A stretch of DNA of 64,000 bases from positions 230,774 to 294,773 of IMG/VR virus record IMGVR_UViG_3300044731_002337, one strand, 5' to 3'. Both the position numbers and the translations under genes were made by a program. Shown here piece after piece: positions 1 through 62,920 of the stretch. The notes beneath the pieces are model-generated. The model did no database searches and was not told the origin of the DNA. It saw nothing but the letters and a program-made list of their open reading frames with translations. How positions within the stretch are numbered: position 1 is the first letter of the stretch; every line of letters starts with the position of its first letter.

Positions 1-624
1 GAGGGAATATCCCAATATGGAATGAATTGTGGTACATTACCTTATCAATCGCCTCAACGATTAAAGGATGGCAAGTGTTCCAAGGCAGATGATATGTGGG
101 CTTTGGGAGTTATATTTTGGCAGATGCAAAATAAGAGATTACCTTATCCAGATCATTTCGATTGTGTTTTGGATTATCGATTCTTCTGGGCACAAGGAAT
201 TTGTGTAAAGGGTGTCACGTTAAGTGAGATATGTTGGAAGAAGGATGCATGTGTGAAGAGATTGATGGAGCATTTACAAATTTCATGGGTTACCGCAGGT
301 GTGCATGACTATGTTCCCGCAGGTGTGCATGACTATGTTACGCCACAAGATACGATGATGATGATGATGATGAAAAAGAGTAATCATAATAATAATAATA
401 AGACATGGGAGATTACAAGGGAGGAATTGGGTGAAGTGGAAGGAAAAGAGTGGATATGGAAATGGGTAAATAAGGTACAAAATGGATTACATAAACGTGG
501 AGCTACTTACAATCGGAATGAGTTGATAGGTTATGTAAAGCAATGTTTTGAATATATATGGTTAGAAGGTAAAGTGGATCCAAGTATTTTATATCATATG
601 TTATGTATTTCCGATGATGAATAA
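1..624 (+). CDS. Ser/Thr protein kinase, C-terminal part (5' truncated by window edge)
   Basis: CGTLPYQSPQ (GTxxYxxPE-like) and ADDMWALGVIFWQM (subdomain IX); frame is open from base 1. Confidence 0.8.
   Translation, partial: EGISQYGMNCGTLPYQSPQRLKDGKCSKADDMWALGVIFWQMQNKRLPYPDHFDCVLDYRFFWAQGICVKGVTLSEICWKKDACVKRLMEHLQISWVTAGVHDYVPAGVHDYVTPQDTMMMMMMKKSNHNNNNKTWEITREELGEVEGKEWIWKWVNKVQNGLHKRGATYNRNELIGYVKQCFEYIWLEGKVDPSILYHMLCISDDE
291..341 (+). repeat. 2x24-bp direct repeat element, in frame (TAGVHDYVPAGVHDYVT)
   Basis: taccgcaggtgtgcatgactatgttcccgcaggtgtgcatgactatgttac; 48/51 nt identical to 35701-35751. Confidence 0.95.
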
Positions 625-8523: not shown

Positions 8524-8532
8524 AAACGGGAA

Positions 8533-8868
8533 ATGACAAATGAAAGCATTACAGTAAATATGAATGTAGAAGAAATAGACTTTATGATTGCTGATTTAAC
8601 TACGAAACTTACACATCAAAAACATGTTATATATATTTTGAAAACTAAGAAACATGATCGGTTTGCAGCGTTACAAGTGAATACAGCGTGTCACCGCATG
8701 AGTAAAATGCAAACTGATTTAGACTTCTTGCATTTATTAAAGCAGCAATTAGAAATGGGGACACAAGATGATCAATGGCTAATGGATTTCCCCATTTATT
8801 TGAGTACCATTCAAAAGATGAGGTTGAAATATGCCTCCTTATTGGCCAAGGCAGCCAACTTGAAATGA
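8533..8868 (+). CDS. hypothetical helical protein
   Basis: Tiles the gene map; no motif. Confidence 0.55.
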   Translation: MTNESITVNMNVEEIDFMIADLTTKLTHQKHVIYILKTKKHDRFAALQVNTACHRMSKMQTDLDFLHLLKQQLEMGTQDDQWLMDFPIYLSTIQKMRLKYASLLAKAANLK

Positions 8869-15730: not shown

Positions 15731-18700
15731 TTATTTTGGAAAAGGTGTTTTGGGTCGTGATGGTTGTGGAATAACAGGAGGAGGAGGAGGAGGAGGTGAT
15801 GTATTGAGTAAGGCTTTGATGGCACGTACAGTATTATACCACATCGGTTGATCTTGTTCATAGAAAGGTTGTGTTTTAATGTAATCTTGATACTCTTGTA
15901 AACGTGTAGCAAGTTCAACAAAACGAAGAGTGAGTAATGGTTTCTGTGGGTTATTCAAATCTCTCATGATGGCATTAGGTAAGGCTGAAATAGGTTTACC
16001 TTGTAGTTTGAATGTGATGAAATAGATGGTGTAGAAGCTGAGTAATAGGGGAGATAGATTGAATTTGGGGCAGGTAATAACATTGCGAGCTTCTAAAAGT
16101 TGATCCCCTTCAATTTTGGAGCCATTGATCCATTCCACAGTGATACCTTCGCCGAAAGCTGTACTCAAGGCGGCATCCAAGGCATCATTGCTGAATATGT
16201 CCATGCCTAATTTACCAAGGAGATCAACGCGATAGAGTTTCTTGGTTTGGGGTTCATAGATGAGAATGTTGGTATGTTTGGCGTAAGTAGAGGCGCTACT
16301 GACTTTCAAGAAAGCTATGCAGAATTGTTTGGTACTGGATTTCATATGGGCGATGAACTGTTCATGACGGTGACCAAGTGAAGTACCATTCCATACCATG
16401 AAGAATTCCAGATTATTGGTAGGAATAGCTACATCAACACTATGTACCTTGTCAAGTAAAGTTCGAAGAATACTATAGAGAGTAATAAGCATAAATTGAT
16501 TGTTACCTGAAAAGCCTTCATGAAGTCGTTTCATAGTATCACAAATGGTTTGAAGTTCTTTTGGTGTATATTCACGTTTGATTTGCATTTCTGTTTGATT
16601 GAATTCTAGGATTTGACGGTCAATGCCTGAGAAAACGGATGACATACTTGAGATATCAAACATGCCAGCCACGGTATCTGCTGTATCATAGTAACGGAAC
16701 GCTCCATTTGATCCTTCATGAAGTAGGATGAGGTCTGAGGAGATAACTTCTTCTTTATTGGTGGCATGCCATTTGATTTTATAGGTATCATTTTGCACAT
16801 CTTTGGATAGGATGACGGCTTGATTGCCCTGATCACCAATGACATCGTTAACATTGAATGCGGGGACGACAGCTTTGTGGGGTACGAGAACGGGGAAACT
16901 ATCTTCAGGTTTCATGGGGAAAGCCATTCCTTCATAGTAGATGACGTTATGACGATTGATACGGCGGTGTACTTTGAAAGGAATTTGGATATTGTTGCGA
17001 TCTAAATGTTTATTACCTTCATAATCTACGGCATTTCGTTTGGCAATGTTAAAGACGACACGACATAGATTTTCGCCTTTGCATCGTTCAAGATGTAATG
17101 TCTCTCGATGAACTTTTTCAAAAATGAATTGGCCATCACTGGAGGTGGAGCATAAGAGGACGATGCGGGTCATGGCGCCGAATCCATGATAGAATTTTTG
17201 GTTCTTGGATTTACACATGCGGGCAATACGACTTGAAGTTTGTTCAAATTCAGTGCGGGTACGACATGGTTCAATCATATACAATATAGGCACATCATAC
17301 AAATCAATACCTTCACGATTGTTGGCATCATAGATAAATAATTTGATTCGTTCACCATGAGGATTTAGTTTTGTATCATTGAAATTGTCACGAATACCTT
17401 TAGCCCGTGGATCCTCTGGTGCTTCATTTTCTTCCTCTTCTTGTTCTTCTTGTATTGCTGCTGCCTTCCTATTCTTCTTATTCTTAGGGGCGGCGGCAGG
17501 AGCTGCTTTTTTATTATTGTTTTTGGGGGCAGGATCCTTTTGTAGAGATGAGATATATACGAATGAGATTTTGGTGGGGTCAGGTGAAGCGGATAGATCA
17601 TTTGTCATATCTTGAAACCATTCAGGGAAACAATGGAGAGCCCATACAATCATTTCGGAACCATATAAATCCTTTGCTGCATCAGAGGTAGTATTACAAG
17701 TAAGAGAATATTTTTGGTTGGGATTTTTTTGATGCTCTTTACGAATATGGGTCATGAATTGGTATACGACAGGACAAAACATTTCAATCCAATGTTGTTT
17801 GGGTACATCATAATTTGGCCTATTCGTTATATTATCTGCACGTTTACCAATGATATTGGCTTCACCATACACAACACCATCTTTAACTTCCTGTTTCTTC
17901 CTTCCAGCTCCCCCCTTCTTTGGTTTGGCTGGTACTTCTCCTTCTACTTCTTCTTGTACTTGTTGTTTCTTATTCTTTCTGGGTTTCCTTTCTGGTTTGG
18001 GTTTAGTTACTATTACTTCATCTTCTACTTCATCTTCTGGTACTTGTTGTTTCTTATTCTTTCTTGGTTTCCTTTCTGGTTTGGGTTTAGGTACTGATTG
18101 TTTCAAGTCTACATTCTTGTTATTCTTCCTTGTTTGAAGTTTGTAATTTTTGGCATGAGCGATGGGTGGTTCATCAAGGAGTAGAGGAGGTTGATGTAGT
18201 GCGAGCCCCATTTCTTCATGTGTAAGTTGGAATGGGTTAACGATACCTTGACGTAATTGTTTGGTGAGTTGTTCATCTGTCTTCTTACTGTAAGTACGTG
18301 TAACGCCATCATAATTGAAGAAATCGAGTGAATCTTTACGGTGAAGAATTTCCTCATTGGTGATCTGGGTATCTGTCTTGTATTGGGAATAAATGGTCTC
18401 TCGAAGACGCTTGATGGATTCAGGGGTAGCATCAAATCGGGTGCGTGAGAATTCGGCGTACCAGCGTTCAATGACATCTTGGTGTGGTAGGTGATTAGAC
18501 GAATCATACATCATGGAGAGTTGGAAAAAGCGTTGGTAGATATCTTCATGATCAACACCCTGAGCTTGTAATGTCTTGACGTGATGGAGAATCTGTTGAT
18601 AGTGAATTTGGAAAAGGGGAACACTAATGACTTCTGAAATGACTTTTTGGGCAAACTTGGTTGGATCTTTATTTGCTGGAGCATAGGTAGTGTTATGATC

Positions 18701-21127
18701 TAAGGCGCGTTCAAGCTTCAATAATGATTCAGGGGTTAATTGGTATGTATCTTTATTGATGTAGTCGTCCCATTTGTGATCACGAACGAGTGGGAGGCGA
18801 TTTTGTGGTTCTCTATGGAGTAAGTTTACGATCCAAAATAAGTCATTAGGGTCATTGTTCATAATGGTGGCAGAGACAGGGAAAAACCGGAAATCAATAT
18901 CTTGACCGGCAAAGATAGTGCTATTGTTGGTGAGTCTTTGCTGATATGCCTGGTAAAGGACATAGGCTAACAAGTCACGCCCACGTATCTTATCATCATC
19001 AATAAAACGGTATTTGATGTAATCGGGACCGTAAATATCCTGTTGTGTGAAACCTGGATGTTCAAAGATTTCGTGCCATGGACTTTTATCGCTTCGACTT
19101 AGGATGTTGTGTGCCTCATCAATGACAAGACATAGTTTACCTGTAATCTTTTTGGCCTTGGTTTGGGCAGCTTGTGTAATGTGTCGATTGGGGAGTTTTA
19201 ATTTGGCGGCTAGAGCATTCACGATTTCCTTGTATACACTGGTATCCGTCTTGGTTAAGCCAATGCCATATGTTTTCTTCAAATCTGCAAATACATTCTG
19301 ATTGTTAGCGTCGGTCATACGTGCAATTTCCTTGTCACGTAACTGGTTGGCTTCTTCTTCCGTTTTACCGTTACTGAGGGCATTGGTACGAACTAGGTCT
19401 AGCTTTTTGCGAGCAGCAACAGAGCACATATCTTTGATGTAGCCTTCCCAGAGTTGAGTGCGTGATTGGGAGTTGGGGGTGACCCAGATAAGTTCGTATT
19501 GATGGTGTTGGAAATTGTTGCTGATGAGATTGGTGACTTTACATGTTTTGCCGGCGCCAGTGGAATCCATGATGAGTAAGCCAGCCGATTCAGAGGTGCG
19601 ATCATATTGGTTGATGACTTCATATTGATGAGGTTCGAATTTAAACCATTTACCTTCCCATGAACATTTCATTTCGGTAAGATTTTTAGAATCAATGGCT
19701 TCTTTAGGTTTCACAAAATCAATATCTGCCTCCTTCTTATCATATCCAAAGGCTTGGTCGATCACATAGTTGGTATCGTGGTATTCCAACTTATAAATGG
19801 CAAATACCCAAGATGGAGATTTACGATCATGTTTCTCATAAGGAATAATGCTTCGACTAAGTTTAGGTTTCAATCGAGCAAATTGAGTTTCATCCATGAT
19901 TACTGCGACTTGGCCGGTATTGTCATCAATCGCTACGTATTTGGCCCGGGCATGTCTAGCCATAGCAACACCCCTTTTGAATCGTTCCACATTTGATAAG
20001 CCCCGTAGTTCCATACGATCCGCATATTTTTCAATCGATATGGTAGAGCGAATTTGGCCACCCAAGTAGTAGTGAAATTCGGTAGCGTGAGGTAAATGTG
20101 CTAATGCATTATCTGCTTTTGCCTTGACATGAAATACTTGGGCATCTGAAACGTTGATGTAGCTATCCGTTTCATATAATCGGTTTTGAAAATACAATAA
20201 TGGTTCAGCGAAATACCCTTGAAATATCTCGTGTTGCGAGTTGGTAAATACTTCAGCGGGTGCAAAATGTTTTAAAGCTGGGTTTTGTTTGGGTTGTGCA
20301 ATGGCGTGAGCTTTGGCAAGTTCTTCGTCTGTGGGAATTTCCATGAGTGGGCCGGGAAGAGGTAATGGTCGTAAAGGTGCTGGTGGTGGTGGTATAGCTT
20401 GTGATGCCGCCTCATTAGGTAAAGGTACCGATTTAGGTCCAAACAACTTTGCAAAAAATCCACGACCCTTCTTCTTCTTTTGACCTAATGTATCTGATTT
20501 CGGTCGAACTGCATTCATCTGTGGAGAAGGTATCACTTCTGTCTTGGGTAATACATTAGGTTTCACGGCTGGTAAAGGCGAAGGTATTACTTCTGTTTTG
20601 GGCAATACATTAGGCTTCACGGATGGTAAAGGAGTTTCTGCTTTGGTGACTGAGGAATAAGATACAAGCTTAGGTTGCTGTGGTGGTGGTGGTGGATTCT
20701 CTAATTGAGTTGATGAGGAGGAATAAGCTACAAGTTTAGTTGGTTTTTGTGGTGGTGGATTTTCTAATTGGGTTGATGAGGAGGAATAAGATACAAGTTT
20801 AGGTTGCTGCGGTGGTTTTTGTTGTGGTGGATTTTCTAATTGGGTTGATGAGGAAACAGAAGATGCATAAGGAACAAGTTTATTTAATGGAGCTTGGGGA
20901 ATAGGCAAGGTAGGATTTGTTGGAGCCATTGTTTGCATTTTGTTGAGTTGGGGACCTTTAGTTCTTCTTCCTTCTTCTTCTTCTCTTTCTAATGGTGGGG
21001 TTATTACTTCATTGGATGGTAAAGGTAAAGGTGCTACAGGTGGTTGTGGTGGTGGTCGTGGTGGTTTTGTGGTCACCTTGGGTTTCATTCCAGCCAGTAA
21101 TTGGGGTTTATAATTTTGTTGCAACAT
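15731..21127 (-). CDS. giant multidomain SF2 helicase (D6/D11-like) with Pro-rich N-terminus, Tudor-like and peptidase-like C-terminal domains
   Basis: GLLIMDSTGAGKT, LVIDEAHN, VSAT, REGIDLYDV, EQTSSRIARMC. Confidence 0.8.
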   Translation of the reverse strand: MLQQNYKPQLLAGMKPKVTTKPPRPPPQPPVAPLPLPSNEVITPPLEREEEEGRRTKGPQLNKMQTMAPTNPTLPIPQAPLNKLVPYASSVSSSTQLENPPQQKPPQQPKLVSYSSSSTQLENPPPQKPTKLVAYSSSSTQLENPPPPPQQPKLVSYSSVTKAETPLPSVKPNVLPKTEVIPSPLPAVKPNVLPKTEVIPSPQMNAVRPKSDTLGQKKKKGRGFFAKLFGPKSVPLPNEAASQAIPPPPAPLRPLPLPGPLMEIPTDEELAKAHAIAQPKQNPALKHFAPAEVFTNSQHEIFQGYFAEPLLYFQNRLYETDSYINVSDAQVFHVKAKADNALAHLPHATEFHYYLGGQIRSTISIEKYADRMELRGLSNVERFKRGVAMARHARAKYVAIDDNTGQVAVIMDETQFARLKPKLSRSIIPYEKHDRKSPSWVFAIYKLEYHDTNYVIDQAFGYDKKEADIDFVKPKEAIDSKNLTEMKCSWEGKWFKFEPHQYEVINQYDRTSESAGLLIMDSTGAGKTCKVTNLISNNFQHHQYELIWVTPNSQSRTQLWEGYIKDMCSVAARKKLDLVRTNALSNGKTEEEANQLRDKEIARMTDANNQNVFADLKKTYGIGLTKTDTSVYKEIVNALAAKLKLPNRHITQAAQTKAKKITGKLCLVIDEAHNILSRSDKSPWHEIFEHPGFTQQDIYGPDYIKYRFIDDDKIRGRDLLAYVLYQAYQQRLTNNSTIFAGQDIDFRFFPVSATIMNNDPNDLFWIVNLLHREPQNRLPLVRDHKWDDYINKDTYQLTPESLLKLERALDHNTTYAPANKDPTKFAQKVISEVISVPLFQIHYQQILHHVKTLQAQGVDHEDIYQRFFQLSMMYDSSNHLPHQDVIERWYAEFSRTRFDATPESIKRLRETIYSQYKTDTQITNEEILHRKDSLDFFNYDGVTRTYSKKTDEQLTKQLRQGIVNPFQLTHEEMGLALHQPPLLLDEPPIAHAKNYKLQTRKNNKNVDLKQSVPKPKPERKPRKNKKQQVPEDEVEDEVIVTKPKPERKPRKNKKQQVQEEVEGEVPAKPKKGGAGRKKQEVKDGVVYGEANIIGKRADNITNRPNYDVPKQHWIEMFCPVVYQFMTHIRKEHQKNPNQKYSLTCNTTSDAAKDLYGSEMIVWALHCFPEWFQDMTNDLSASPDPTKISFVYISSLQKDPAPKNNNKKAAPAAAPKNKKNRKAAAIQEEQEEEENEAPEDPRAKGIRDNFNDTKLNPHGERIKLFIYDANNREGIDLYDVPILYMIEPCRTRTEFEQTSSRIARMCKSKNQKFYHGFGAMTRIVLLCSTSSDGQFIFEKVHRETLHLERCKGENLCRVVFNIAKRNAVDYEGNKHLDRNNIQIPFKVHRRINRHNVIYYEGMAFPMKPEDSFPVLVPHKAVVPAFNVNDVIGDQGNQAVILSKDVQNDTYKIKWHATNKEEVISSDLILLHEGSNGAFRYYDTADTVAGMFDISSMSSVFSGIDRQILEFNQTEMQIKREYTPKELQTICDTMKRLHEGFSGNNQFMLITLYSILRTLLDKVHSVDVAIPTNNLEFFMVWNGTSLGHRHEQFIAHMKSSTKQFCIAFLKVSSASTYAKHTNILIYEPQTKKLYRVDLLGKLGMDIFSNDALDAALSTAFGEGITVEWINGSKIEGDQLLEARNVITCPKFNLSPLLLSFYTIYFITFKLQGKPISALPNAIMRDLNNPQKPLLTLRFVELATRLQEYQDYIKTQPFYEQDQPMWYNTVRAIKALLNTSPPPPPPPVIPQPSRPKTPFPK
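17950..18095 (-). repeat. in-frame duplication KPKPERKPRKNKKQQV x2
   Basis: Two near-identical copies of ttgttgtttcttattctttctNggtttcctttctggtttgggtttag. Confidence 0.9.
20525..20880 (-). repeat. in-frame repeats (VKPNVLPKTEVIPSP x2; KLVxY..SSSTQLENPP x3)
   Basis: Visible tandem peptide and DNA repeats in the helicase N-terminus. Confidence 0.85.
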
Positions 21128-34780: not shown

Positions 34781-36340
34781 ATGAATTATGGTGCAATAGT
34801 TATGATTCTCTTATACATTGTCATAGTACTGGCCATGCACTGGAATGTGGATGGAGTTCTACTACAAAGACAACGCATGAAAGGTGTAACATTATTAACG
34901 CCCAGAGATCAAGTGCCACAATCAAAGACCGGCAAGCAAGTAGCACAATCAAAGACCGGCAAGCAAGTAGCACAATCAAAGACTAGGAAACGAGTACCAC
35001 AATCAGAGACTAGAAATCGAGTACTAAAATTAGAGACTAGACATCAGGTAGTATCAAGACAATATGAAAAAAGGAGTGAAATATCAGAAGATTATGTTAA
35101 ATTTTTTTGTATTAAAAATGGAGTATTATGGGATACATATCAAGTGGAAACACGTAGGGACGTTTTGAAGGCATTTCGTGAGTATATACTTCCAATACCA
35201 GAGACTGAAGATTTACGTGAGATCGAACATTTTATTCGAGAAAAATTGGATACGACTCTGGGGTGGTTTAAGGTAAAATCTGAATCATTTAATAATGTAG
35301 TAGAGGAATTATATACTGTCATTGCAAAGTATACCGATGTTATGAACACAGTCATGGATCCTTTTCCATATCAATGGAACCCTGAAGATATAAATGCATA
35401 TAGAGTATGGTTACAAGAATGGGCTAAAGATAGAAACATTAATCCTATACCTAATTCATATGAAGAGTTTTGCGATATACGAGGTACTGCACAGATCAAG
35501 GCATCAAGAGGGACACCAGCACCGATAATACCAAAAGAAATAACACCGGAACGAAAGAGAGTATCACGCACAGAGAAACCATATAATACTGATACAGATA
35601 TTGTCGAGTTGATAACTACCCATGAATCCAGTAGTGTCAAGAGCGATTCAAGCTCAGGCTCAGGCTCAGATTCAGATACATTTCATGAAGTTCTATCTGG
35701 TACCGCAGGTTTGCATGACAATGTTCCCGCAGGTGTGCATGACAATGTTACCTCTTCGAATGAATCAGAAGTTACCACTTCAAGTGGATCAGAGAAAGGA
35801 CTGCAAAAGGCGGCTGAAACAATCTCTAAACCCAAATCTGAAGATGATATGTCTGAGGAGGAATTGAACTATTTGAAGTTTGAGAATGAGTTATGGGAAG
35901 GGGAGGATTTCGGTAAGAAAAAGTCGCGATTTTGGAAGGAGTTTCCACAAAAATATCTAGTTCTGACTCATCCACGTCCCTTTTTTCCTACTTCAAAACA
36001 GATAGACGTAGCAGTGGGAAATGCAATAGAGAGTGAAAAATCAAACCTTTTGGGATTAGGTTTATTTGGAAAATTGGATGCAGATAATATTTTAACATTG
36101 TTACAGTGTATTCGTGAGTATAAGAGGTTTATAAAATATTGGCAAAGAGATTGGTGGTGGTTTAACAAATATAATTATCGACCTGAAACACATGACAAAG
36201 ATTTGGAGAAGGTTGTTGGATGTAAACATTATAAAGATAAATCTAGTTATGTCCAATATACACCAGAATATCTAGCATGTGTTGCAAAAGTTAGCAAGGC
36301 AATTACGTGGTTTCAAAAGGAGCATCCAGCAAATTTATAA
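34781..36340 (+). CDS. membrane-anchored protein, tandem family member 3 (shared domain apparently twice)
   Basis: N-terminal TM; VAVGNAIESEKSNLLGLGLFGKLD and YRPETH match members 1 and 2. Confidence 0.8.
   Translation: MNYGAIVMILLYIVIVLAMHWNVDGVLLQRQRMKGVTLLTPRDQVPQSKTGKQVAQSKTGKQVAQSKTRKRVPQSETRNRVLKLETRHQVVSRQYEKRSEISEDYVKFFCIKNGVLWDTYQVETRRDVLKAFREYILPIPETEDLREIEHFIREKLDTTLGWFKVKSESFNNVVEELYTVIAKYTDVMNTVMDPFPYQWNPEDINAYRVWLQEWAKDRNINPIPNSYEEFCDIRGTAQIKASRGTPAPIIPKEITPERKRVSRTEKPYNTDTDIVELITTHESSSVKSDSSSGSGSDSDTFHEVLSGTAGLHDNVPAGVHDNVTSSNESEVTTSSGSEKGLQKAAETISKPKSEDDMSEEELNYLKFENELWEGEDFGKKKSRFWKEFPQKYLVLTHPRPFFPTSKQIDVAVGNAIESEKSNLLGLGLFGKLDADNILTLLQCIREYKRFIKYWQRDWWWFNKYNYRPETHDKDLEKVVGCKHYKDKSSYVQYTPEYLACVAKVSKAITWFQKEHPANL
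34910..35044 (+). repeat. 27-bp in-frame tandem repeat, about 5 units (QVAQSKTGK-like)
   Basis: caagtagcacaatcaaagaccggcaag and progressively diverged copies. Confidence 0.9.
35701..35751 (+). repeat. 2x24-bp direct repeat element, in frame (TAGLHDNVPAGVHDNVT)
   Basis: 48/51 nt identical to 291-341. Confidence 0.95.
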
Positions 36341-42867: not shown

Positions 42868-43495
42868 TGGATTTCATTATTTCATGGAGGTTCGATATAT
42901 GAATCGTCCATTTAGTGAGCAACGTGATGCATGGATGGCTTTATCTGAAGAAAAGAAACAGGAATTGGATGGTATTGCATTTAGGTCCCAGTATCAACAA
43001 TCAGGAAATAATGTAGACATGGAGGAGACTAATGAGGCCAAGGGTATTACTAAAAAATATGATACAGGATATAATGTGTTTTGTGCCGAATTAACTAAAA
43101 AAACGAGTTACATTACAAAAGAGCAGTGGGATGGTTTGCGTGATGAGCAGAGACAGACATTGCAAGGGCTGATAGGGCAAGAATTGGAGAATGTCGGATT
43201 GGAGGAATTAAATACTATGATAGGGACTTGTTTGTCGAGTCGATGGAGTGAACGTCAAAAGAAGATGTTTCGAGAGATGGTACCTTCCATGACAGCTTCC
43301 AATATGGCGCAAAAGAATAAAGAAGCTGGTGAATTGTGGAAATCATTACCCGTAGAAAAGAAGAATCATTATGCTCGTATTGCTTATCTAAGTAAAATCA
43401 AATTTGTAGACCAATTGAAAAAAAGAAAACCTCCCAAGAAACACCGTGAAGCGTTATCTGATTTGTCGGATAAGATGACTCAATTAGAAGTATAA
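42833..43495 (+). CDS. HMG-box protein
   Basis: NGFHYFM...AWMALSEEKKQ and TGYNVFC...KEAGELWKSLPVEKKNHY. Confidence 0.75.
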   Translation: MSSNNYGKQYINGFHYFMEVRYMNRPFSEQRDAWMALSEEKKQELDGIAFRSQYQQSGNNVDMEETNEAKGITKKYDTGYNVFCAELTKKTSYITKEQWDGLRDEQRQTLQGLIGQELENVGLEELNTMIGTCLSSRWSERQKKMFREMVPSMTASNMAQKNKEAGELWKSLPVEKKNHYARIAYLSKIKFVDQLKKRKPPKKHREALSDLSDKMTQLEV

Positions 43496-57300: not shown

Positions 57301-58020
57301 ATGAGTGATGAAGGTGAAGAAGGTTACACTAGTCCGAAAAAAGTCAAAGCTTCAGATACAAACTTACGATGGGCTGTTGGAGTCTTAACATTACTTGTTG
57401 TGACTATTGCTGTATTTCTAGGTATACAATTAGTTAATCTAGATGAATTCCCAGGCTTCAAGAGTAAAGTCAATACTCTTATTGCCACTAAACTCTTACC
57501 TGTAACCAATACCATTAACGCCAATGCAGCTAGAACACCAAGTGAATGGATCTCCATGACACCTATAGTCTCAGTATTCAATGCTACTGGTAACACCAAA
57601 ACCACCACCACTTTTGCATATGTACTCAATACCAATCTACCAGCTAAAGCATCCTTCTTCTGGTACCGAAAAACAGGCAAGTTTGTAGAAGTCTATTATG
57701 TGATTGATGTCATACAAAGTAATGGAGCTGCTACTACTTCGACTGATACGGTACGAATATATATCACATTACCCACCAATCATAATGCCTATGCTACTGC
57801 AGCGTCCCAAAGAATACCCGCCAGTATCAATGTTACCCTCTTGAGCGATGTCAGTTTAAATACTATCATCCCCATCAAAAAAGTAGATCTCAGAACGAGT
57901 GACGCCCCACAAACTGGTAAATCCACCGAATTCGATCAATTGTATTTCGATATGGTATTCGGTTCAAGTGCAACCTACAATATCTCTCTATCAGGTACTT
58001 TTGTCTATGTTACACCTTGA
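57301..58020 (+). CDS. type II membrane protein with phage RBP-head-like C-terminal domain
   Basis: TM, then WYRKTGKFVEVYY...IYITLP...LSGTFVYVT, a pattern typical of tail-fibre/RBP heads. Confidence 0.6.
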   Translation: MSDEGEEGYTSPKKVKASDTNLRWAVGVLTLLVVTIAVFLGIQLVNLDEFPGFKSKVNTLIATKLLPVTNTINANAARTPSEWISMTPIVSVFNATGNTKTTTTFAYVLNTNLPAKASFFWYRKTGKFVEVYYVIDVIQSNGAATTSTDTVRIYITLPTNHNAYATAASQRIPASINVTLLSDVSLNTIIPIKKVDLRTSDAPQTGKSTEFDQLYFDMVFGSSATYNISLSGTFVYVTP

Positions 58021-58034
58021 TTTTTTTTTGTTTC

Positions 58035-58159
58035 CATCAAGGAGGTTACCTAAATTGCATCAAGGAGGTTACCTAAATTGCATCAAGGAGGTTACCTAAA
58101 TTGCATCAAGGAGGTTACCTAAATTGCATCAAGGAGGTTACCTAAATTGCATCAAGGAG
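58035..58159. repeat. perfect 23-bp tandem array (catcaaggaggttacctaaattg) x5 plus a 10-nt partial unit
   Basis: Units start at 58035, 58058, 58081, 58104, 58127 and 58150 (partial); no spacers. Confidence 0.97.
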
Positions 58160-59171
58160 ACACCAATTGAAGTCGTGATAACAATTCAAGTGTCACTTTT
58201 GGATGTTCGCACTTGTATTTCCCTTGATGATACATGACACTCTTAATTAATTGATTGGCTTCCATCTCTTCCTGAGTGACTATTGGCCCCATATTTCTCA
58301 ATGCATGTCGTGGCATAGTGATTAATGGTGGTGGAATAGCGGTCGACAAAGATCCCAATGAACGATGATACGATAACATATTACAATACACCATTGTTGC
58401 GGAAGAACGAACTTGCGGATCATAACGTAACATTGGTCGAATCACATGTTTCCATAACTTGTCATGAGGAAAATAAAGATCTAAAAATTGTAAATAGACC
58501 TCTTTATAATCTCTGGTCAAGTACCAATAGATTTGTTCATATGATAATAGACAATATTCTTTTGACATAATCTTACGTAATTGGTTATATCGCCACCAAC
58601 CAGGTTTATAATAACTATACAATAATCCCAAGGTAAAAATAATTTCTTTTTGTAATAATACTTCCAACCATAATATCCCTAATGCCCAAATATCTGAATT
58701 ACAATGACGGGTAATCATTCCAGCTACCTCTTGCAATTCAGGTGGTCGATAACGTACATGATACTCTTCCACCCATAATGAACTATGACTCTGCATTCGA
58801 GCATGACCATAATCAATCAATATCCCCCTTTGATCTTTTGTCATACATATATTATCCAACTTGATATCATAATGAATCACATGCAACGCATTATGCAAAT
58901 ACACCAATCCTGATATCACATCCCAAAAAATCTGAAACCAATTTACATCCATATTATATTGTAATGTCGCATGATAACGTGGCATCTTCATTGTCAAATA
59001 GTCATCTTGATACCCCAACTCATACACCTTGTTCAAATGTGGGTGATCCCCTGTTTGCAATAAAATATACGATTCTACAATAAACGTTGAATGACATTTT
59101 ATATGTATATGCTTTGATACATGCTTTCGATACAAATCTACATATCCATAATTACAACGTATTCTCTTCAT
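58152..59171 (-). CDS. Ser/Thr protein kinase (CDK-like YRPPE)
   Basis: NYGYV, IHYDIKLDNI, LIDYG, YRPPE, DIWALG, MLRYDPQVR. Confidence 0.85.
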   Translation of the reverse strand: MKRIRCNYGYVDLYRKHVSKHIHIKCHSTFIVESYILLQTGDHPHLNKVYELGYQDDYLTMKMPRYHATLQYNMDVNWFQIFWDVISGLVYLHNALHVIHYDIKLDNICMTKDQRGILIDYGHARMQSHSSLWVEEYHVRYRPPELQEVAGMITRHCNSDIWALGILWLEVLLQKEIIFTLGLLYSYYKPGWWRYNQLRKIMSKEYCLLSYEQIYWYLTRDYKEVYLQFLDLYFPHDKLWKHVIRPMLRYDPQVRSSATMVYCNMLSYHRSLGSLSTAIPPPLITMPRHALRNMGPIVTQEEMEANQLIKSVMYHQGKYKCEHPKVTLELLSRLQLVSP

Positions 59172-59258
59172 TTTGTTCTTTTTAATTATTATCCCTCCTT
59201 CTCCCTCTGAAAAAAAAAGACAAATCAACAAATATAAAAAAAAAAATAAACCAATACT

Positions 59259-60695
59259 ATGGCTGTTACAGGTCCACAAATAGCAACTATTGCTGTTGTA
59301 TGTAGCGTCATCTTCGCTTTACTCTTATTATTGCTATTTCGCAAATGGAATAACAGAAGAAATACAACACGACACAATTCATTTGCTAGAACACAAAAAC
59401 CACAAAGAATAACCAACAATGAACGAACTAGAGATATATCCAACACCACACAAAAACTGTCTGGTGTAGCATCTACTGGTTCGGGTAGAAATGATTCTGA
59501 CCCCACAAAAAACTTGTCTGATGGTAATGATTCTGGTGTAGCATCTGCTGTGTTGCGTAAAAGAAAATCTGACCATAATAGTGAATCTGATAAACCATGG
59601 AGACTCTCTAAACGTAACAAAAATCAAGAAACACATGAACAAAGAGTACCAAACCAACCAAATTCGATTGATATACCATTGACCTTAGTGCAGCCAGTTC
59701 AACCATCACATGCACTTGAAATTCGTCCAAATCAAGAACGAAACATGACGAAATTTGTAAGACTTTTCTGGTCTGATACATATAAGAATGTATTTGAACC
59801 TATTGTCACTGGCATCAACCAATTTTTAGGGTTCGTATTTGGGGGCAGAAGACCACGAAAAGCAGAAAATTCATTAGTAGAAACAGTCATGGTACATTTT
59901 GCACAACACGATGGTATGATAAGGTATCCACCACTATATCCACTCATTACTCTAGCTTATAATATCGTTGATCATAATTCCTTGGAGATGTACTTTTGTT
60001 ATATTATCACATGTCTGTATCAATCGAGTAATCTTTACATAATCACTCAAGCAATAATCACTAGTGAGTTAAATAAGAATTCACCGATTGTTCAAGCCGC
60101 AATTGATCTTTTTCCTTTTTTGCAATTGTATAAACGTAGAGGGAATATTCTCTTCCCAGAATTTGAAAAACTTATTCGCTATTGGATTGAATTGAACAAA
60201 TCCAAACTCAACTCGGACAGAATGATGATCGAAAAAGTCAATAGTGATAGTGAGTCAATACCATCTTCATCTACTTCCCCTGAGTCATCTGTTCTTGTTG
60301 CGCATCCCCCTATTGTTCAAGCGTACATCAACTATCTACAAACAGATATACATAATGATCCGGATCAGATTGATTTTGTACCATCACATTATGATCGACT
60401 CCAGATTGAGGATTATGCCCAACCAAATCAACTATCACGTAATAATCAACTCCAGATTGAGGGTTATGAACCATCAAATCAACATGTTAGTAGACGAGAA
60501 CACCCAACCTATTACAAAGTCATCTGTACAATAGAAGGGATTATAGTTGTTACTCTCATGGGCGCTCTTATCACATTACCAAATCGAGACGTGTATTATA
60601 CCAACACGGAACTTTCTTCAGATCTCCTAATAGCCTACAAAAACTTGATGTTCTTTCTTTTCGGACAATGGGGTAATGGACGTTATTACCAATGA
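59259..60695 (+). CDS. N-terminally TM-anchored hypothetical protein
   Basis: TM followed by a basic stretch and disordered linker; internal short duplications (SGVAS x2, LQIE.Y x2). Confidence 0.7.
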   Translation: MAVTGPQIATIAVVCSVIFALLLLLLFRKWNNRRNTTRHNSFARTQKPQRITNNERTRDISNTTQKLSGVASTGSGRNDSDPTKNLSDGNDSGVASAVLRKRKSDHNSESDKPWRLSKRNKNQETHEQRVPNQPNSIDIPLTLVQPVQPSHALEIRPNQERNMTKFVRLFWSDTYKNVFEPIVTGINQFLGFVFGGRRPRKAENSLVETVMVHFAQHDGMIRYPPLYPLITLAYNIVDHNSLEMYFCYIITCLYQSSNLYIITQAIITSELNKNSPIVQAAIDLFPFLQLYKRRGNILFPEFEKLIRYWIELNKSKLNSDRMMIEKVNSDSESIPSSSTSPESSVLVAHPPIVQAYINYLQTDIHNDPDQIDFVPSHYDRLQIEDYAQPNQLSRNNQLQIEGYEPSNQHVSRREHPTYYKVICTIEGIIVVTLMGALITLPNRDVYYTNTELSSDLLIAYKNLMFFLFGQWGNGRYYQ

Positions 60696-62741: not shown

Positions 62742-62920
62742 TTGCTGATGTTTATTTATTTATTTATTTTTTTCATTTCACATCTCACATCATAACCTCA
62801 CTCACTATCCTTATCCCCATGACAACAGGTAACTTCTCGTTCATTCGAAGAGGCAACATATAACAATACCATATTACCACAGAAAAAAAAAAGAAAAAAA
62901 TAACAAAGAAGGGAAACATT

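What the first reader, a model, noticed from the sequence alone, without database searches (positions are those of the whole stretch)
58035..58159. Perfect 23-bp tandem array between convergent genes, sharing a GTTACC...TGCAT skeleton with the coding element
Seen: five identical units plus a partial one fill almost the entire gap between two convergent genes, and the partial unit contains the kinase stop codon. Each unit has the dyad AGGT-T-ACCT, and TTG-CAT-CAA spans each junction. Rotated, the unit reads GTTACC-taaat-TGCAT-caaggag, against GTT(A/C)CC-gcaggtg-TGCAT-gactat in the 24-bp element. It lies a few kb past the skew inversion. Inference: an iteron-like, replication or packaging site, or another member of one repeat family.
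Basis: partly seen in the sequence, partly recalled or inferred. Interest (0 to 1): 0.65.

Follow-up and report, generated by a model that had tools for sequence, protein, structure and literature searches.

The report
Variable 23-bp minisatellite, GTTACC repeat family
The perfect 23-bp tandem array between two convergent genes of an uncultured lake giant virus is real, and it is one copy-number-variable locus of a dispersed family of about 24-bp repeats with a GTTACC core that sits both inside genes and between them; nothing supports a replication or packaging site.

Summary
Window 58035-58159 holds 5.4 identical 23-bp units, filling 117 of the 131 nt between two convergent ORFs. The kinase stop codon lies in the last partial unit.

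The window is the right end of a 294,773-bp contig of a divergent Nucleocytoviricota-like virus from lake water. Genome-wide, the array belongs to a family of 12 arrays plus about 10 solo units. All are built as GTTACC, a 13-15-nt core and a short linker.
- Arrays inside ORFs all have period 24 or 48. They are read in at least three frames and both orientations, giving different peptides.
- Intergenic arrays have periods 23, 25 and 27, and most abut a stop codon.

A second metagenome has the same 10.5 kb with no mismatch and exactly one unit fewer. A second viral contig with the same oligonucleotide signature carries the same family.

The array lies 6.3 kb from a skew switch of terminus-type polarity, next to no replication gene, and family members show no fixed orientation. 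The best reading is a hypervariable minisatellite tolerated in a 3'-3' gap. The family's spread needs a DNA-level, GTTACC-dependent process that remains unidentified.

The parts
58035..58159 (.). Tandem array: 5 full 23-bp units plus a 10-nt partial unit, all identical. GTTACC cores start at 58045, 58068, 58091, 58114 and 58137. All six frames are closed (at most 22 open codons).
58021..58034 (+). T-rich spacer (T9 then GTTTC) between the stop of the upstream ORF and the array.
57301..58020 (+). Upstream ORF of 239 aa with no Pfam or PHROG match. The identical protein is found in 5 contigs of other samples.
58152..59279 (-). Convergent Ser/Thr protein kinase ORF (public gene call 58152-59027, 291 aa, GTG start). 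Its last two codons and TGA stop are supplied by the partial repeat unit.
289..341 (+). Family member of type B (GTTACC-GCAGGTGTGCATGAC), 24 bp x 2.2, in frame in another kinase ORF, where it reads VTAGVHDY.
35703..35793 (+). Family members: two type-B units followed by two type-A units (GTTACC-TCTTCGAATGAA), 24-bp phase, in frame in a 519-aa ORF.
62818..62857 (-). Degenerate type-A unit followed by a second GTTACC, in an intergenic gap 64 nt upstream of the ankyrin gene.

Best explanation
The array is a hypervariable minisatellite (VNTR). It is one locus of a lineage-specific, dispersed family of about 24-bp tandem repeats whose units are GTTACC, a 13-15-nt core and a short linker.

Inferred model:
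- Family units are seeded and spread at the DNA level, without regard to genes, by recombination, gene conversion or another process that depends on the GTTACC core.
- They then expand and contract by replication slippage or unequal exchange, which keeps the units of one array identical.
- Selection filters the outcome. Inside ORFs only in-frame, stop-free arrays of period 24 or 48 survive, as peptide repeats of whatever frame happens to be open.
- Out-of-frame or stop-bearing arrays of period 23, 25 or 27 survive only where they truncate a dispensable C-terminal tail or lie between genes.

This array is of the second kind. It occupies a 3'-3' gap, supplies the last two codons and the stop of the kinase, and copy-number change alters neither protein. 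At this site it most likely has no required function.

Shown: the array, the family, the split of period by context, the use of different frames and orientations, and a one-unit difference between two assemblies. Inferred: the seeding mechanism, the selection filter and the lack of function.
For: - Array and flanks.
- Family: genome-wide TRF finds 12 arrays of period 23-27 or 48 that hold GTTACC. Only 0.85% of random 23-mers of this genome hold the hexamer.
- Generalised motif GTTACC-N5-9-[AC]AT[GC]A: 55 matches at 23 loci against 3.3 in shuffles.
- Bridging unit at genome 161959: GTTACCTAAA followed by the type-B core, at the edge of another array. The 10-mer has 7 hits against 0.6 expected.
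- Period by context: 8 of 8 ORF arrays are divisible by 3 and 3 of 4 intergenic arrays are not (Fisher p 0.018). 4 of 12 arrays are intergenic in an 89%-coding contig (binomial p 0.036).
- Frames: type A reads EVTSSNEP, LPLRMNEK or SFEEVTS, and type B reads VTAGVHDY, VMQTCGNN or SCKPAVTS, in Pfam-verified ankyrin and kinase genes among others.
- Mosaics: A and B units alternate in phase at genome 175315, 266476 and 140419.
- Stop codons lie at or inside the array edge in 3 of 4 intergenic arrays here and in 2 in L056.
- Copy number: L009 from another sample matches 10,487 nt with 0 mismatches and one 23-nt gap. The ratio of repeat-unitig depth to flank depth is about 3.8-4.6 in one lake run and 5.3-6.4 in another.
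- No coding capacity and no Rfam match.
Against: - GTTACC is invariant across about 20 loci, across frames and orientations, and across two viruses whose shared core proteins are only 50-60% identical. That degree of DNA-level conservation is hard to reconcile with purely neutral turnover and points to recognition by some protein. Arrays might therefore have a function.
- No recombinase, TnpB or GIY-YIG nuclease was found in the contig to drive spreading. The contig is only about half of the genome by CheckV's estimate.
- The 4-versus-5 copy difference comes from short-read assemblies, which can mis-size arrays near read length.
- The + strand of the array folds somewhat better than shuffles (z -2.3).
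Confidence: 0.6

Rival explanations
1. Arrays of binding sites, like baculovirus homologous regions or iterons. A lineage-specific DNA-binding protein recognises the GTTACC-containing unit, and the dispersed arrays act as enhancers, origins, or packaging or partition sites. In-ORF copies are then dual-use sequence.
For: The hexamer and much of the core are conserved regardless of frame, orientation or coding status, and between two viruses. The loci are dispersed and multi-copy with variable copy number, as in homologous regions. Independence from orientation fits recognition of double-stranded DNA.
Against: - 8 of 12 arrays lie inside ORFs.
- Spacing between GTTACC and the second conserved block varies from 5 to 9 nt, which is poor for a rigid bipartite site.
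- No member sits at the skew switch, and the switch has terminus-type polarity.
- There is no adjacent initiator gene or AT-rich unwinding region.
- No bZIP was found despite ATTGCATCA in the unit.
- GTTACC is neither enriched nor avoided outside the family.
Confidence: 0.2
2. Bidirectional transcription terminator or 3'-end formation element for the two convergent genes. The quasi-palindromic units would form an extended imperfect hairpin in either transcript, by analogy with the mimivirus hairpin rule.
For: The array lies between convergent genes directly after both stop codons. A second 23-bp family array (genome 41584) is also between convergent genes. The + strand RNA folds at -37.4 kcal/mol against -28.9 for shuffles, z -2.3.
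Against: - The - strand, which is the kinase transcript, gives z -1.0 with a diffuse ensemble.
- Most family arrays are inside ORFs, where termination would be harmful.
- Only 4 of about 240 genes would be served.
- The simple terminator scan finds nothing at the array.
- No RNA run holds the locus, so 3' ends could not be examined.
Confidence: 0.08
3. Relic of a coding repeat: the decayed C-terminal tail of a former repeat-containing ORF. In the frame used by half of the coding arrays, GAG GTT ACC TAA reads E-V-T-stop.
For: The + strand translation contains KEVT followed by a stop, matching the EVT of type-A coding arrays. GTTACCTAA-type units terminate two other arrays.
Against: The units are 100% identical, so the array was recently expanded rather than decayed. 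A period of 23 cannot have been coding. The array is preceded by the upstream gene's stop and a T9 run.
Confidence: 0.07
4. Assembly artefact.
For: Short-read assemblies can mis-size tandem repeats, and Logan unitigs break inside the array.
Against: The repeat is present in two independent JGI assemblies and in unitigs of at least three runs from different studies, with repeat-unitig depth 4-6 times the flank depth.
Confidence: 0.02

Closest known systems
VNTRs of large DNA viruses, such as the African swine fever virus I73R-I329L intergenic repeat and B602L central variable region, and the white spot syndrome virus ORF94/75/125 repeats (from my own knowledge)
   Same: Short perfect tandem units, both in intergenic gaps and in frame in ORFs. 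Copy number differs between otherwise near-identical isolates. No known required function, and they serve as strain markers.
   Different: Those loci are unrelated to one another in sequence. Here at least 20 loci share one core and phase, and the same DNA unit is read in several frames and both orientations.
Repeat families of Emiliania huxleyi virus 86 (three families noted in PMC1440845; details from Allen et al. 2006 are from memory)
   Same: A giant algal virus with several dispersed families of short repeats, some coding and some non-coding.
   Different: In EhV-86 each family is confined to one context: a promoter nonamer, proline-rich coding repeats, or AT-rich non-coding repeats. Here one family spans both contexts. 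There is no sequence similarity, and exact-pattern scans of IMG/VR found no other carrier.
Baculovirus, ascovirus and nimavirus homologous regions
   Same: Dispersed multi-locus tandem repeats with variable copy number and a conserved core.
   Different: Homologous regions are intergenic, with units of about 70 bp and a 30-bp imperfect palindrome, and their enhancer and origin activity is proven. Here units are 23-27 bp, mostly inside ORFs, without a consistent palindrome, and no activity has been tested.
Plasmid and phage iterons
   Same: Directly repeated units of 17-23 bp, head to tail.
   Different: Iterons sit at one origin next to the initiator gene and an AT-rich unwinding element. This array has none of these and has about 20 relatives elsewhere in the contig.
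Rickettsia palindromic elements, the in-frame mobile insertions in ORFs (from my own knowledge)
   Same: A DNA-level element found in many unrelated genes, tolerated because it stays in frame, and also found in intergenic DNA.
   Different: Those elements are 100-150-bp single palindromic insertions, not tandem arrays of 24-bp units, and they occur in a bacterial host.
Human minisatellites that share a core sequence (Jeffreys core; from my own knowledge)
   Same: Many hypervariable arrays at different loci share a short core, which is thought to promote recombination.
   Different: The organism, the unit and the core differ. In this virus most of the arrays are in coding DNA.

Membership tests
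GTTACC-core ~24-bp repeat family of this virus lineage (defined here) | Unit contains GTTACC | tested here: met
   All 5 units have it. Only 0.85% of random 23-mers of the genome do.
GTTACC-core ~24-bp repeat family of this virus lineage (defined here) | Head-to-tail units with a period of 23-27 bp | tested here: met
   This array has period 23. The other arrays have periods 23, 24, 25, 27 and 48.
GTTACC-core ~24-bp repeat family of this virus lineage (defined here) | Second conserved block [AC]AT[GC]A, 5-9 nt after the hexamer | tested here: met
   The unit has GCATCA after 6 nt. The motif has 55 matches against 3.3 expected.
GTTACC-core ~24-bp repeat family of this virus lineage (defined here) | Sequence intermediates link it to the other types | tested here: met
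   Genome 161959 reads GTTACCTAAA followed by GTGTGCATGA, the type-B core. L056 1953 reads GTTACCTAAAATAAATTG at the end of a B-like array.
VNTR / minisatellite | Copy number differs between otherwise identical genomes | tested here: met
   L009 differs from the window's contig only by one 23-nt unit over 10,487 nt. Depth ratios differ between runs. Caveat: all of this rests on short-read assemblies.
VNTR / minisatellite | Non-coding tandem units of 10-100 bp | tested here: met
   There are stops in all six frames within 22 codons.
Replication iterons | Adjacent to the initiator gene and an AT-rich unwinding region | tested here: not met
   The neighbours are an ORFan and a protein kinase. The only AT-rich feature is a T9 run.
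Replication iterons | Located at the origin, where the skew switches from negative to positive | tested here: not met
   The nearest switch is 6.3 kb away and goes from positive to negative, which is terminus-type polarity.
Replication iterons | Bound by the initiator protein | not testable with these tools
   This needs EMSA, ChIP or DAP-seq.
Baculovirus-type homologous regions | Several dispersed loci of related tandem units | tested here: met
   There are 12 arrays across the 295-kb contig.
Baculovirus-type homologous regions | Intergenic location, with an imperfect palindrome in each unit | tested here: not met
   8 of 12 arrays are inside ORFs. Only this array has the 9-bp quasi-palindrome AGGTTACCT, and types A and B have no common dyad.
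Hairpin-type 3'-end signal (mimivirus hairpin rule) | Stable hairpin just after the stop codon in the transcript | tested here: inconclusive
   z is -2.3 on the + strand and -1.0 on the - strand. No RNA data are available.

The most novel reading that the evidence does not exclude
The GTTACC family is not passive slippage debris. It is either a self-propagating 'mobile minisatellite', or a set of recognition arrays for a lineage-specific DNA-binding or recombination protein. On this reading a sequence-specific process seeds 24-bp units into genes and spacers irrespective of frame and orientation, and has kept the core intact in viruses whose core proteins have diverged to 50-60% identity.
Probability: 0.3. 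Interest if true: 0.75.

Novelty: new variant of a known kind. Interest (0 to 1): 0.5.

Why it matters
- The array by itself is an ordinary viral VNTR. It is useful as a strain marker for an uncultured lake giant virus, and it explains why assemblies break there.
- The family is the interesting part. One DNA unit is found in about 20 places, translated in three frames and two orientations or not translated at all. Its period splits cleanly by whether it must stay in frame, and it is shared with a second virus.
- That makes it a compact natural example of DNA-level repeat spread followed by a selection filter. It also implies an unidentified protein or process that reads GTTACC.
- Such arrays generate new peptide repeats in ankyrin and kinase proteins, and they truncate C-termini, so they are a source of rapid protein variation in this lineage.

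Tried and rejected
- Exact and degenerate pattern scans of IMG/VR for the three unit types found either nothing or single chance matches without arrays.
The scan with the degenerate type-A pattern gave 57 single hits, and only L056 proved to be a family carrier.
- Protein-based searches for related loci with both flanking proteins found no relatives in IMG/VR.
- Contigs of relatives with 59-60% identical PolB (L070-L072), syntenic with genome 204-214 kb, carry no family arrays. The window's contig has none in that region either.
- Searches for enzymes that could drive mobility found no Phage_integrase, TnpB-type or GIY-YIG match in the contig.
- The 339-aa ORF that carries the largest mosaic array has an RHSFAT-like motif, but no Pfam or PHROG match.
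- bZIP lead: the unit holds ATTGCATCA, which I recall as a C/EBP-ATF-type site. No credible bZIP gene was found; the best hit was 14 bits, below the cut-off, and the controls rang in bacteria.
- Rfam found no match. The sigma-70 and intrinsic-terminator scans were uninformative.
- Look-up of the public kinase product failed. The record behind L082 is not searchable.
- NCLDV capsid and D5_N profiles did not match in the contig. An HMG-box match in the window (43241-43396) is below the cut-off.

Full report
**1. What is there**

Window 58035-58159 holds five identical copies of CATCAAGGAGGTTACCTAAATTG plus a 10-nt partial copy. Tandem Repeats Finder gives period 23, 5.4 copies and 100% matches.
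- The + ORF 57301-58020 (239 aa, no Pfam or PHROG family) ends in TGA and is followed by T9.
- The - ORF 58152-59279 is a protein kinase (PF00069, E 7e-19). Its TGA is the reverse complement of 58152-58154, inside the partial unit. The array therefore supplies its last two codons and its stop.
- 117 of the 131 nt between the two stops are array.
- All six frames of the array are closed, and Rfam finds nothing.
Stems of 4 and 3 bp are not beyond chance by my estimate.

**2. Context**

The window is the last 64 kb of a 294,773-bp IMG/VR contig from lake-water metagenomes. CheckV estimates it at 55% complete.
- The contig encodes a Pox_A32-type ATPase, several kinases, ankyrin proteins and a very divergent family-B polymerase. 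The polymerase's nearest relatives are 60% identical, and by structure and language-model features it resembles Nucleocytoviricota polymerases.
- GC skew is about +0.2 over 282 kb, independent of gene strand. It flips at genome 282,536, which is window 51,763.
- The array is 6.3 kb past that point.
- Under the usual rule that the leading strand is G-rich (established knowledge), a switch from positive to negative along the strand marks a terminus or fork-convergence point, not an origin.

**3. The family**

Genome-wide TRF shows that nearly every high-scoring array of period 23-27 or 48 contains GTTACC.

| Type | Core after GTTACC | Loci (genome coordinates) |
|---|---|---|
| A | TCTTCGAATGAAC | 1-113, 41584, 42214, 44528, 72828, 161884, 175315, 266520 |
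| B | GCAGGTKTGCATGAC | 31795, 175315, 219613, 231062, 266476 |
| This array | TAAATTGCATCAA | 288808 (= window 58035) |

- Solo or paired units occur at about ten further places, including window 62818-62857.
- A and B units alternate in phase in mosaics at 175315, 266476 and 140419.

Four results place this array in the family:
- Only 0.85% of random 23-mers hold the hexamer.
- A generalised two-block motif has 55 hits at 23 loci against 3.3 expected.
- The unit at genome 161959 reads GTTACCTAAA followed by the type-B core, at the edge of another array. The shared 10-mer has 7 hits against 0.6 expected.

**4. A DNA-level element filtered by selection**
- All eight arrays inside ORFs have period 24 or 48. 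Three of the four intergenic arrays have periods 23, 25 and 23, and the fourth (27) carries stops (Fisher p 0.018).
- Intergenic placement is enriched: 4 of 12 arrays in an 89%-coding contig (p 0.036).
- The same DNA is read as different peptides in different genes. These include Pfam-verified ankyrin and kinase proteins, and type B is read in both orientations:

| Type | Peptide readings |
|---|---|
| A | EVTSSNEP, LPLRMNEK, SFEEVTS |
| B | VTAGVHDY, VMQTCGNN, SCKPAVTS |

- Orientation on the contig is 6:6.
- In three of the four intergenic arrays, and in two arrays of the second virus, the stop codon of a flanking ORF lies in or at the first unit. This fits arrays arising inside 3' coding ends and truncating them.
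- GTTACC is neither enriched nor avoided outside the family: 111 sites against about 116 expected.

**5. Variability**
- A 10,487-bp contig from another JGI sample (L009) matches the window's contig with 0 mismatches and a single 23-nt gap. It has four full units instead of five.
- Logan unitigs of lake runs break inside the array. The ratio of repeat-unitig depth to flank depth is about 3.8-4.6 in one run and 5.3-6.4 in another. My conversion, (array length - 30)/23, corresponds to roughly 5-6 and 6.5-7.5 units.
- These are short-read data, so the sizes are indicative only.
- The left end of the contig is itself a family array, so such arrays limit assembly.

**6. A second carrier**
- Among 57 metagenome hits to a degenerate type-A pattern, only L056/L082 (JACCDN010916741.1, a 35.7-kb contig) carries arrays. 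It has:
  - an A-like array;
  - an A-like unit, then three B-like units, then a GTTACCTAAA-type unit, directly after the stop of a NADAR ORF;
  - a B-like pair inside an ORF;
  - several solo units, two of which are identical 26-mers in different genes in opposite orientation.
- The generalised motif has 10 matches at 7 loci in 17.8 kb, against 0.1 expected.
- Its genes (NADAR, Ras, hydrolase, HD, ankyrin) are densely packed and look viral.
- It shares no protein with the 295-kb contig.
- Its tetranucleotide signature correlates at 0.82 with the window's contig and at 0.89 with L070. Unrelated contigs give 0.1-0.5. L070 comes from the same NCBI assembly, encodes a polymerase 59% identical, and is syntenic with the window's genome.
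- L082 shows no GC skew, so its assignment to that relative is probable rather than certain.
- The family cores are thus conserved at the DNA level across a divergence where core proteins are 50-60% identical.

**7. Interpretation**

The best-supported reading (0.6) is a hypervariable minisatellite of this family, tolerated because it lies in a 3'-3' gap where frame does not matter. Slippage or unequal exchange keeps it homogeneous, and it has no required local function.

The invariance of GTTACC across frames, orientations and two viruses implies that some DNA-level process reads it, either a recombination step or a binding protein. That process is unidentified. No integrase, TnpB, GIY-YIG or bZIP gene was found in the contig.

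| Rival reading | Confidence | Main point |
|---|---|---|
| Homologous-region-like or iteron-like binding arrays | 0.2 | Fits the DNA-level conservation, but most arrays are in ORFs |
| Bidirectional terminator | 0.08 | Fold z is -2.3 on the + strand and -1.0 on the - strand |
| Relic of a coding tail (GAG GTT ACC TAA reads EVT-stop) | 0.07 | The units are 100% identical and period 23 cannot code |
| Assembly artefact | 0.02 | The repeat is present in independent assemblies and runs |

**8. Comparison and novelty**

As a single locus, this is a new member of a well-known kind, the viral VNTR. As a family, it is a new variant: a dispersed minisatellite family with a shared core that spans coding and non-coding DNA in several frames.
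- I know of no described equivalent in giant viruses. Literature searches found none. EhV-86 has three repeat families (PMC1440845), each tied to one context.
- Functionally it resembles core-sharing minisatellites and in-frame mobile insertions more than it resembles iterons.

Noticed in passing
window 1-64000 (whole contig); switch at window ~51,763: GC skew is very strong (about +0.2 to +0.4) and independent of gene strand over 282 kb. It flips to about -0.1 to -0.35 for the last 12 kb. The polarity is that of a terminus or convergence point. Contigs of relatives (L070, L071) also show skew.
   Followed up: partly
genome 1-113 (outside the window; left end of the contig): The contig begins inside a 27-bp x 4.2 family array that holds the stop codon of the first ORF. 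Family arrays appear to be where assemblies break.
   Followed up: partly
genome 143,975-144,631 (outside the window): About 650 bp of AT-rich complex tandem repeats (periods 50-106, units like TTTTATTCCAATTGAAAAACAT). It is unrelated to the GTTACC family and is a better candidate for a structural or origin-like region than the 23-bp array.
   Followed up: no
window 34910-35040: A 27-bp x 4.9 array encoding QSKTGKQVA-type repeats lies in the same 519-aa ORF that also carries type-B and type-A family units. A Logan contig breaks there.
   Followed up: partly
window 17949-18112 and 20526-20854: Longer tandem repeats (84, 54 and 63 bp) lie inside a 1798-aa ORF on the - strand.
   Followed up: no
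window 58021-58029: A T9 run follows directly after the TGA of the 239-aa ORF. It resembles a T-rich early-termination signal of the poxvirus type. Its frequency after other stop codons was not measured.
   Followed up: no
L056 7955-7980 (+) and about 8524-8549 (-): Two identical 26-nt solo units (GTTACCGCTAGGTCGCATGACACCGT) lie in two different ORFs of the second virus, in opposite orientation. One is inside a Pfam-verified alpha/beta hydrolase. They look like single-unit insertions.
   Followed up: partly
genome 174764-175783 (locus L087): A 339-aa ORF carries the largest A/B mosaic array. It has an RHSFAT-like motif upstream and a Cys-rich C-terminus, but no Pfam or PHROG match.
   Followed up: partly
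genome 207981-210923 (PolB, P0001); L070 217-2061: The family-B polymerase is an orphan: only four metagenomic relatives at 43-60% identity, then 28% over a fifth of its length. The relative's contig encodes a kinesin next to the polymerase, and the window's genome has the homologue at 211949-213820.
   Followed up: partly
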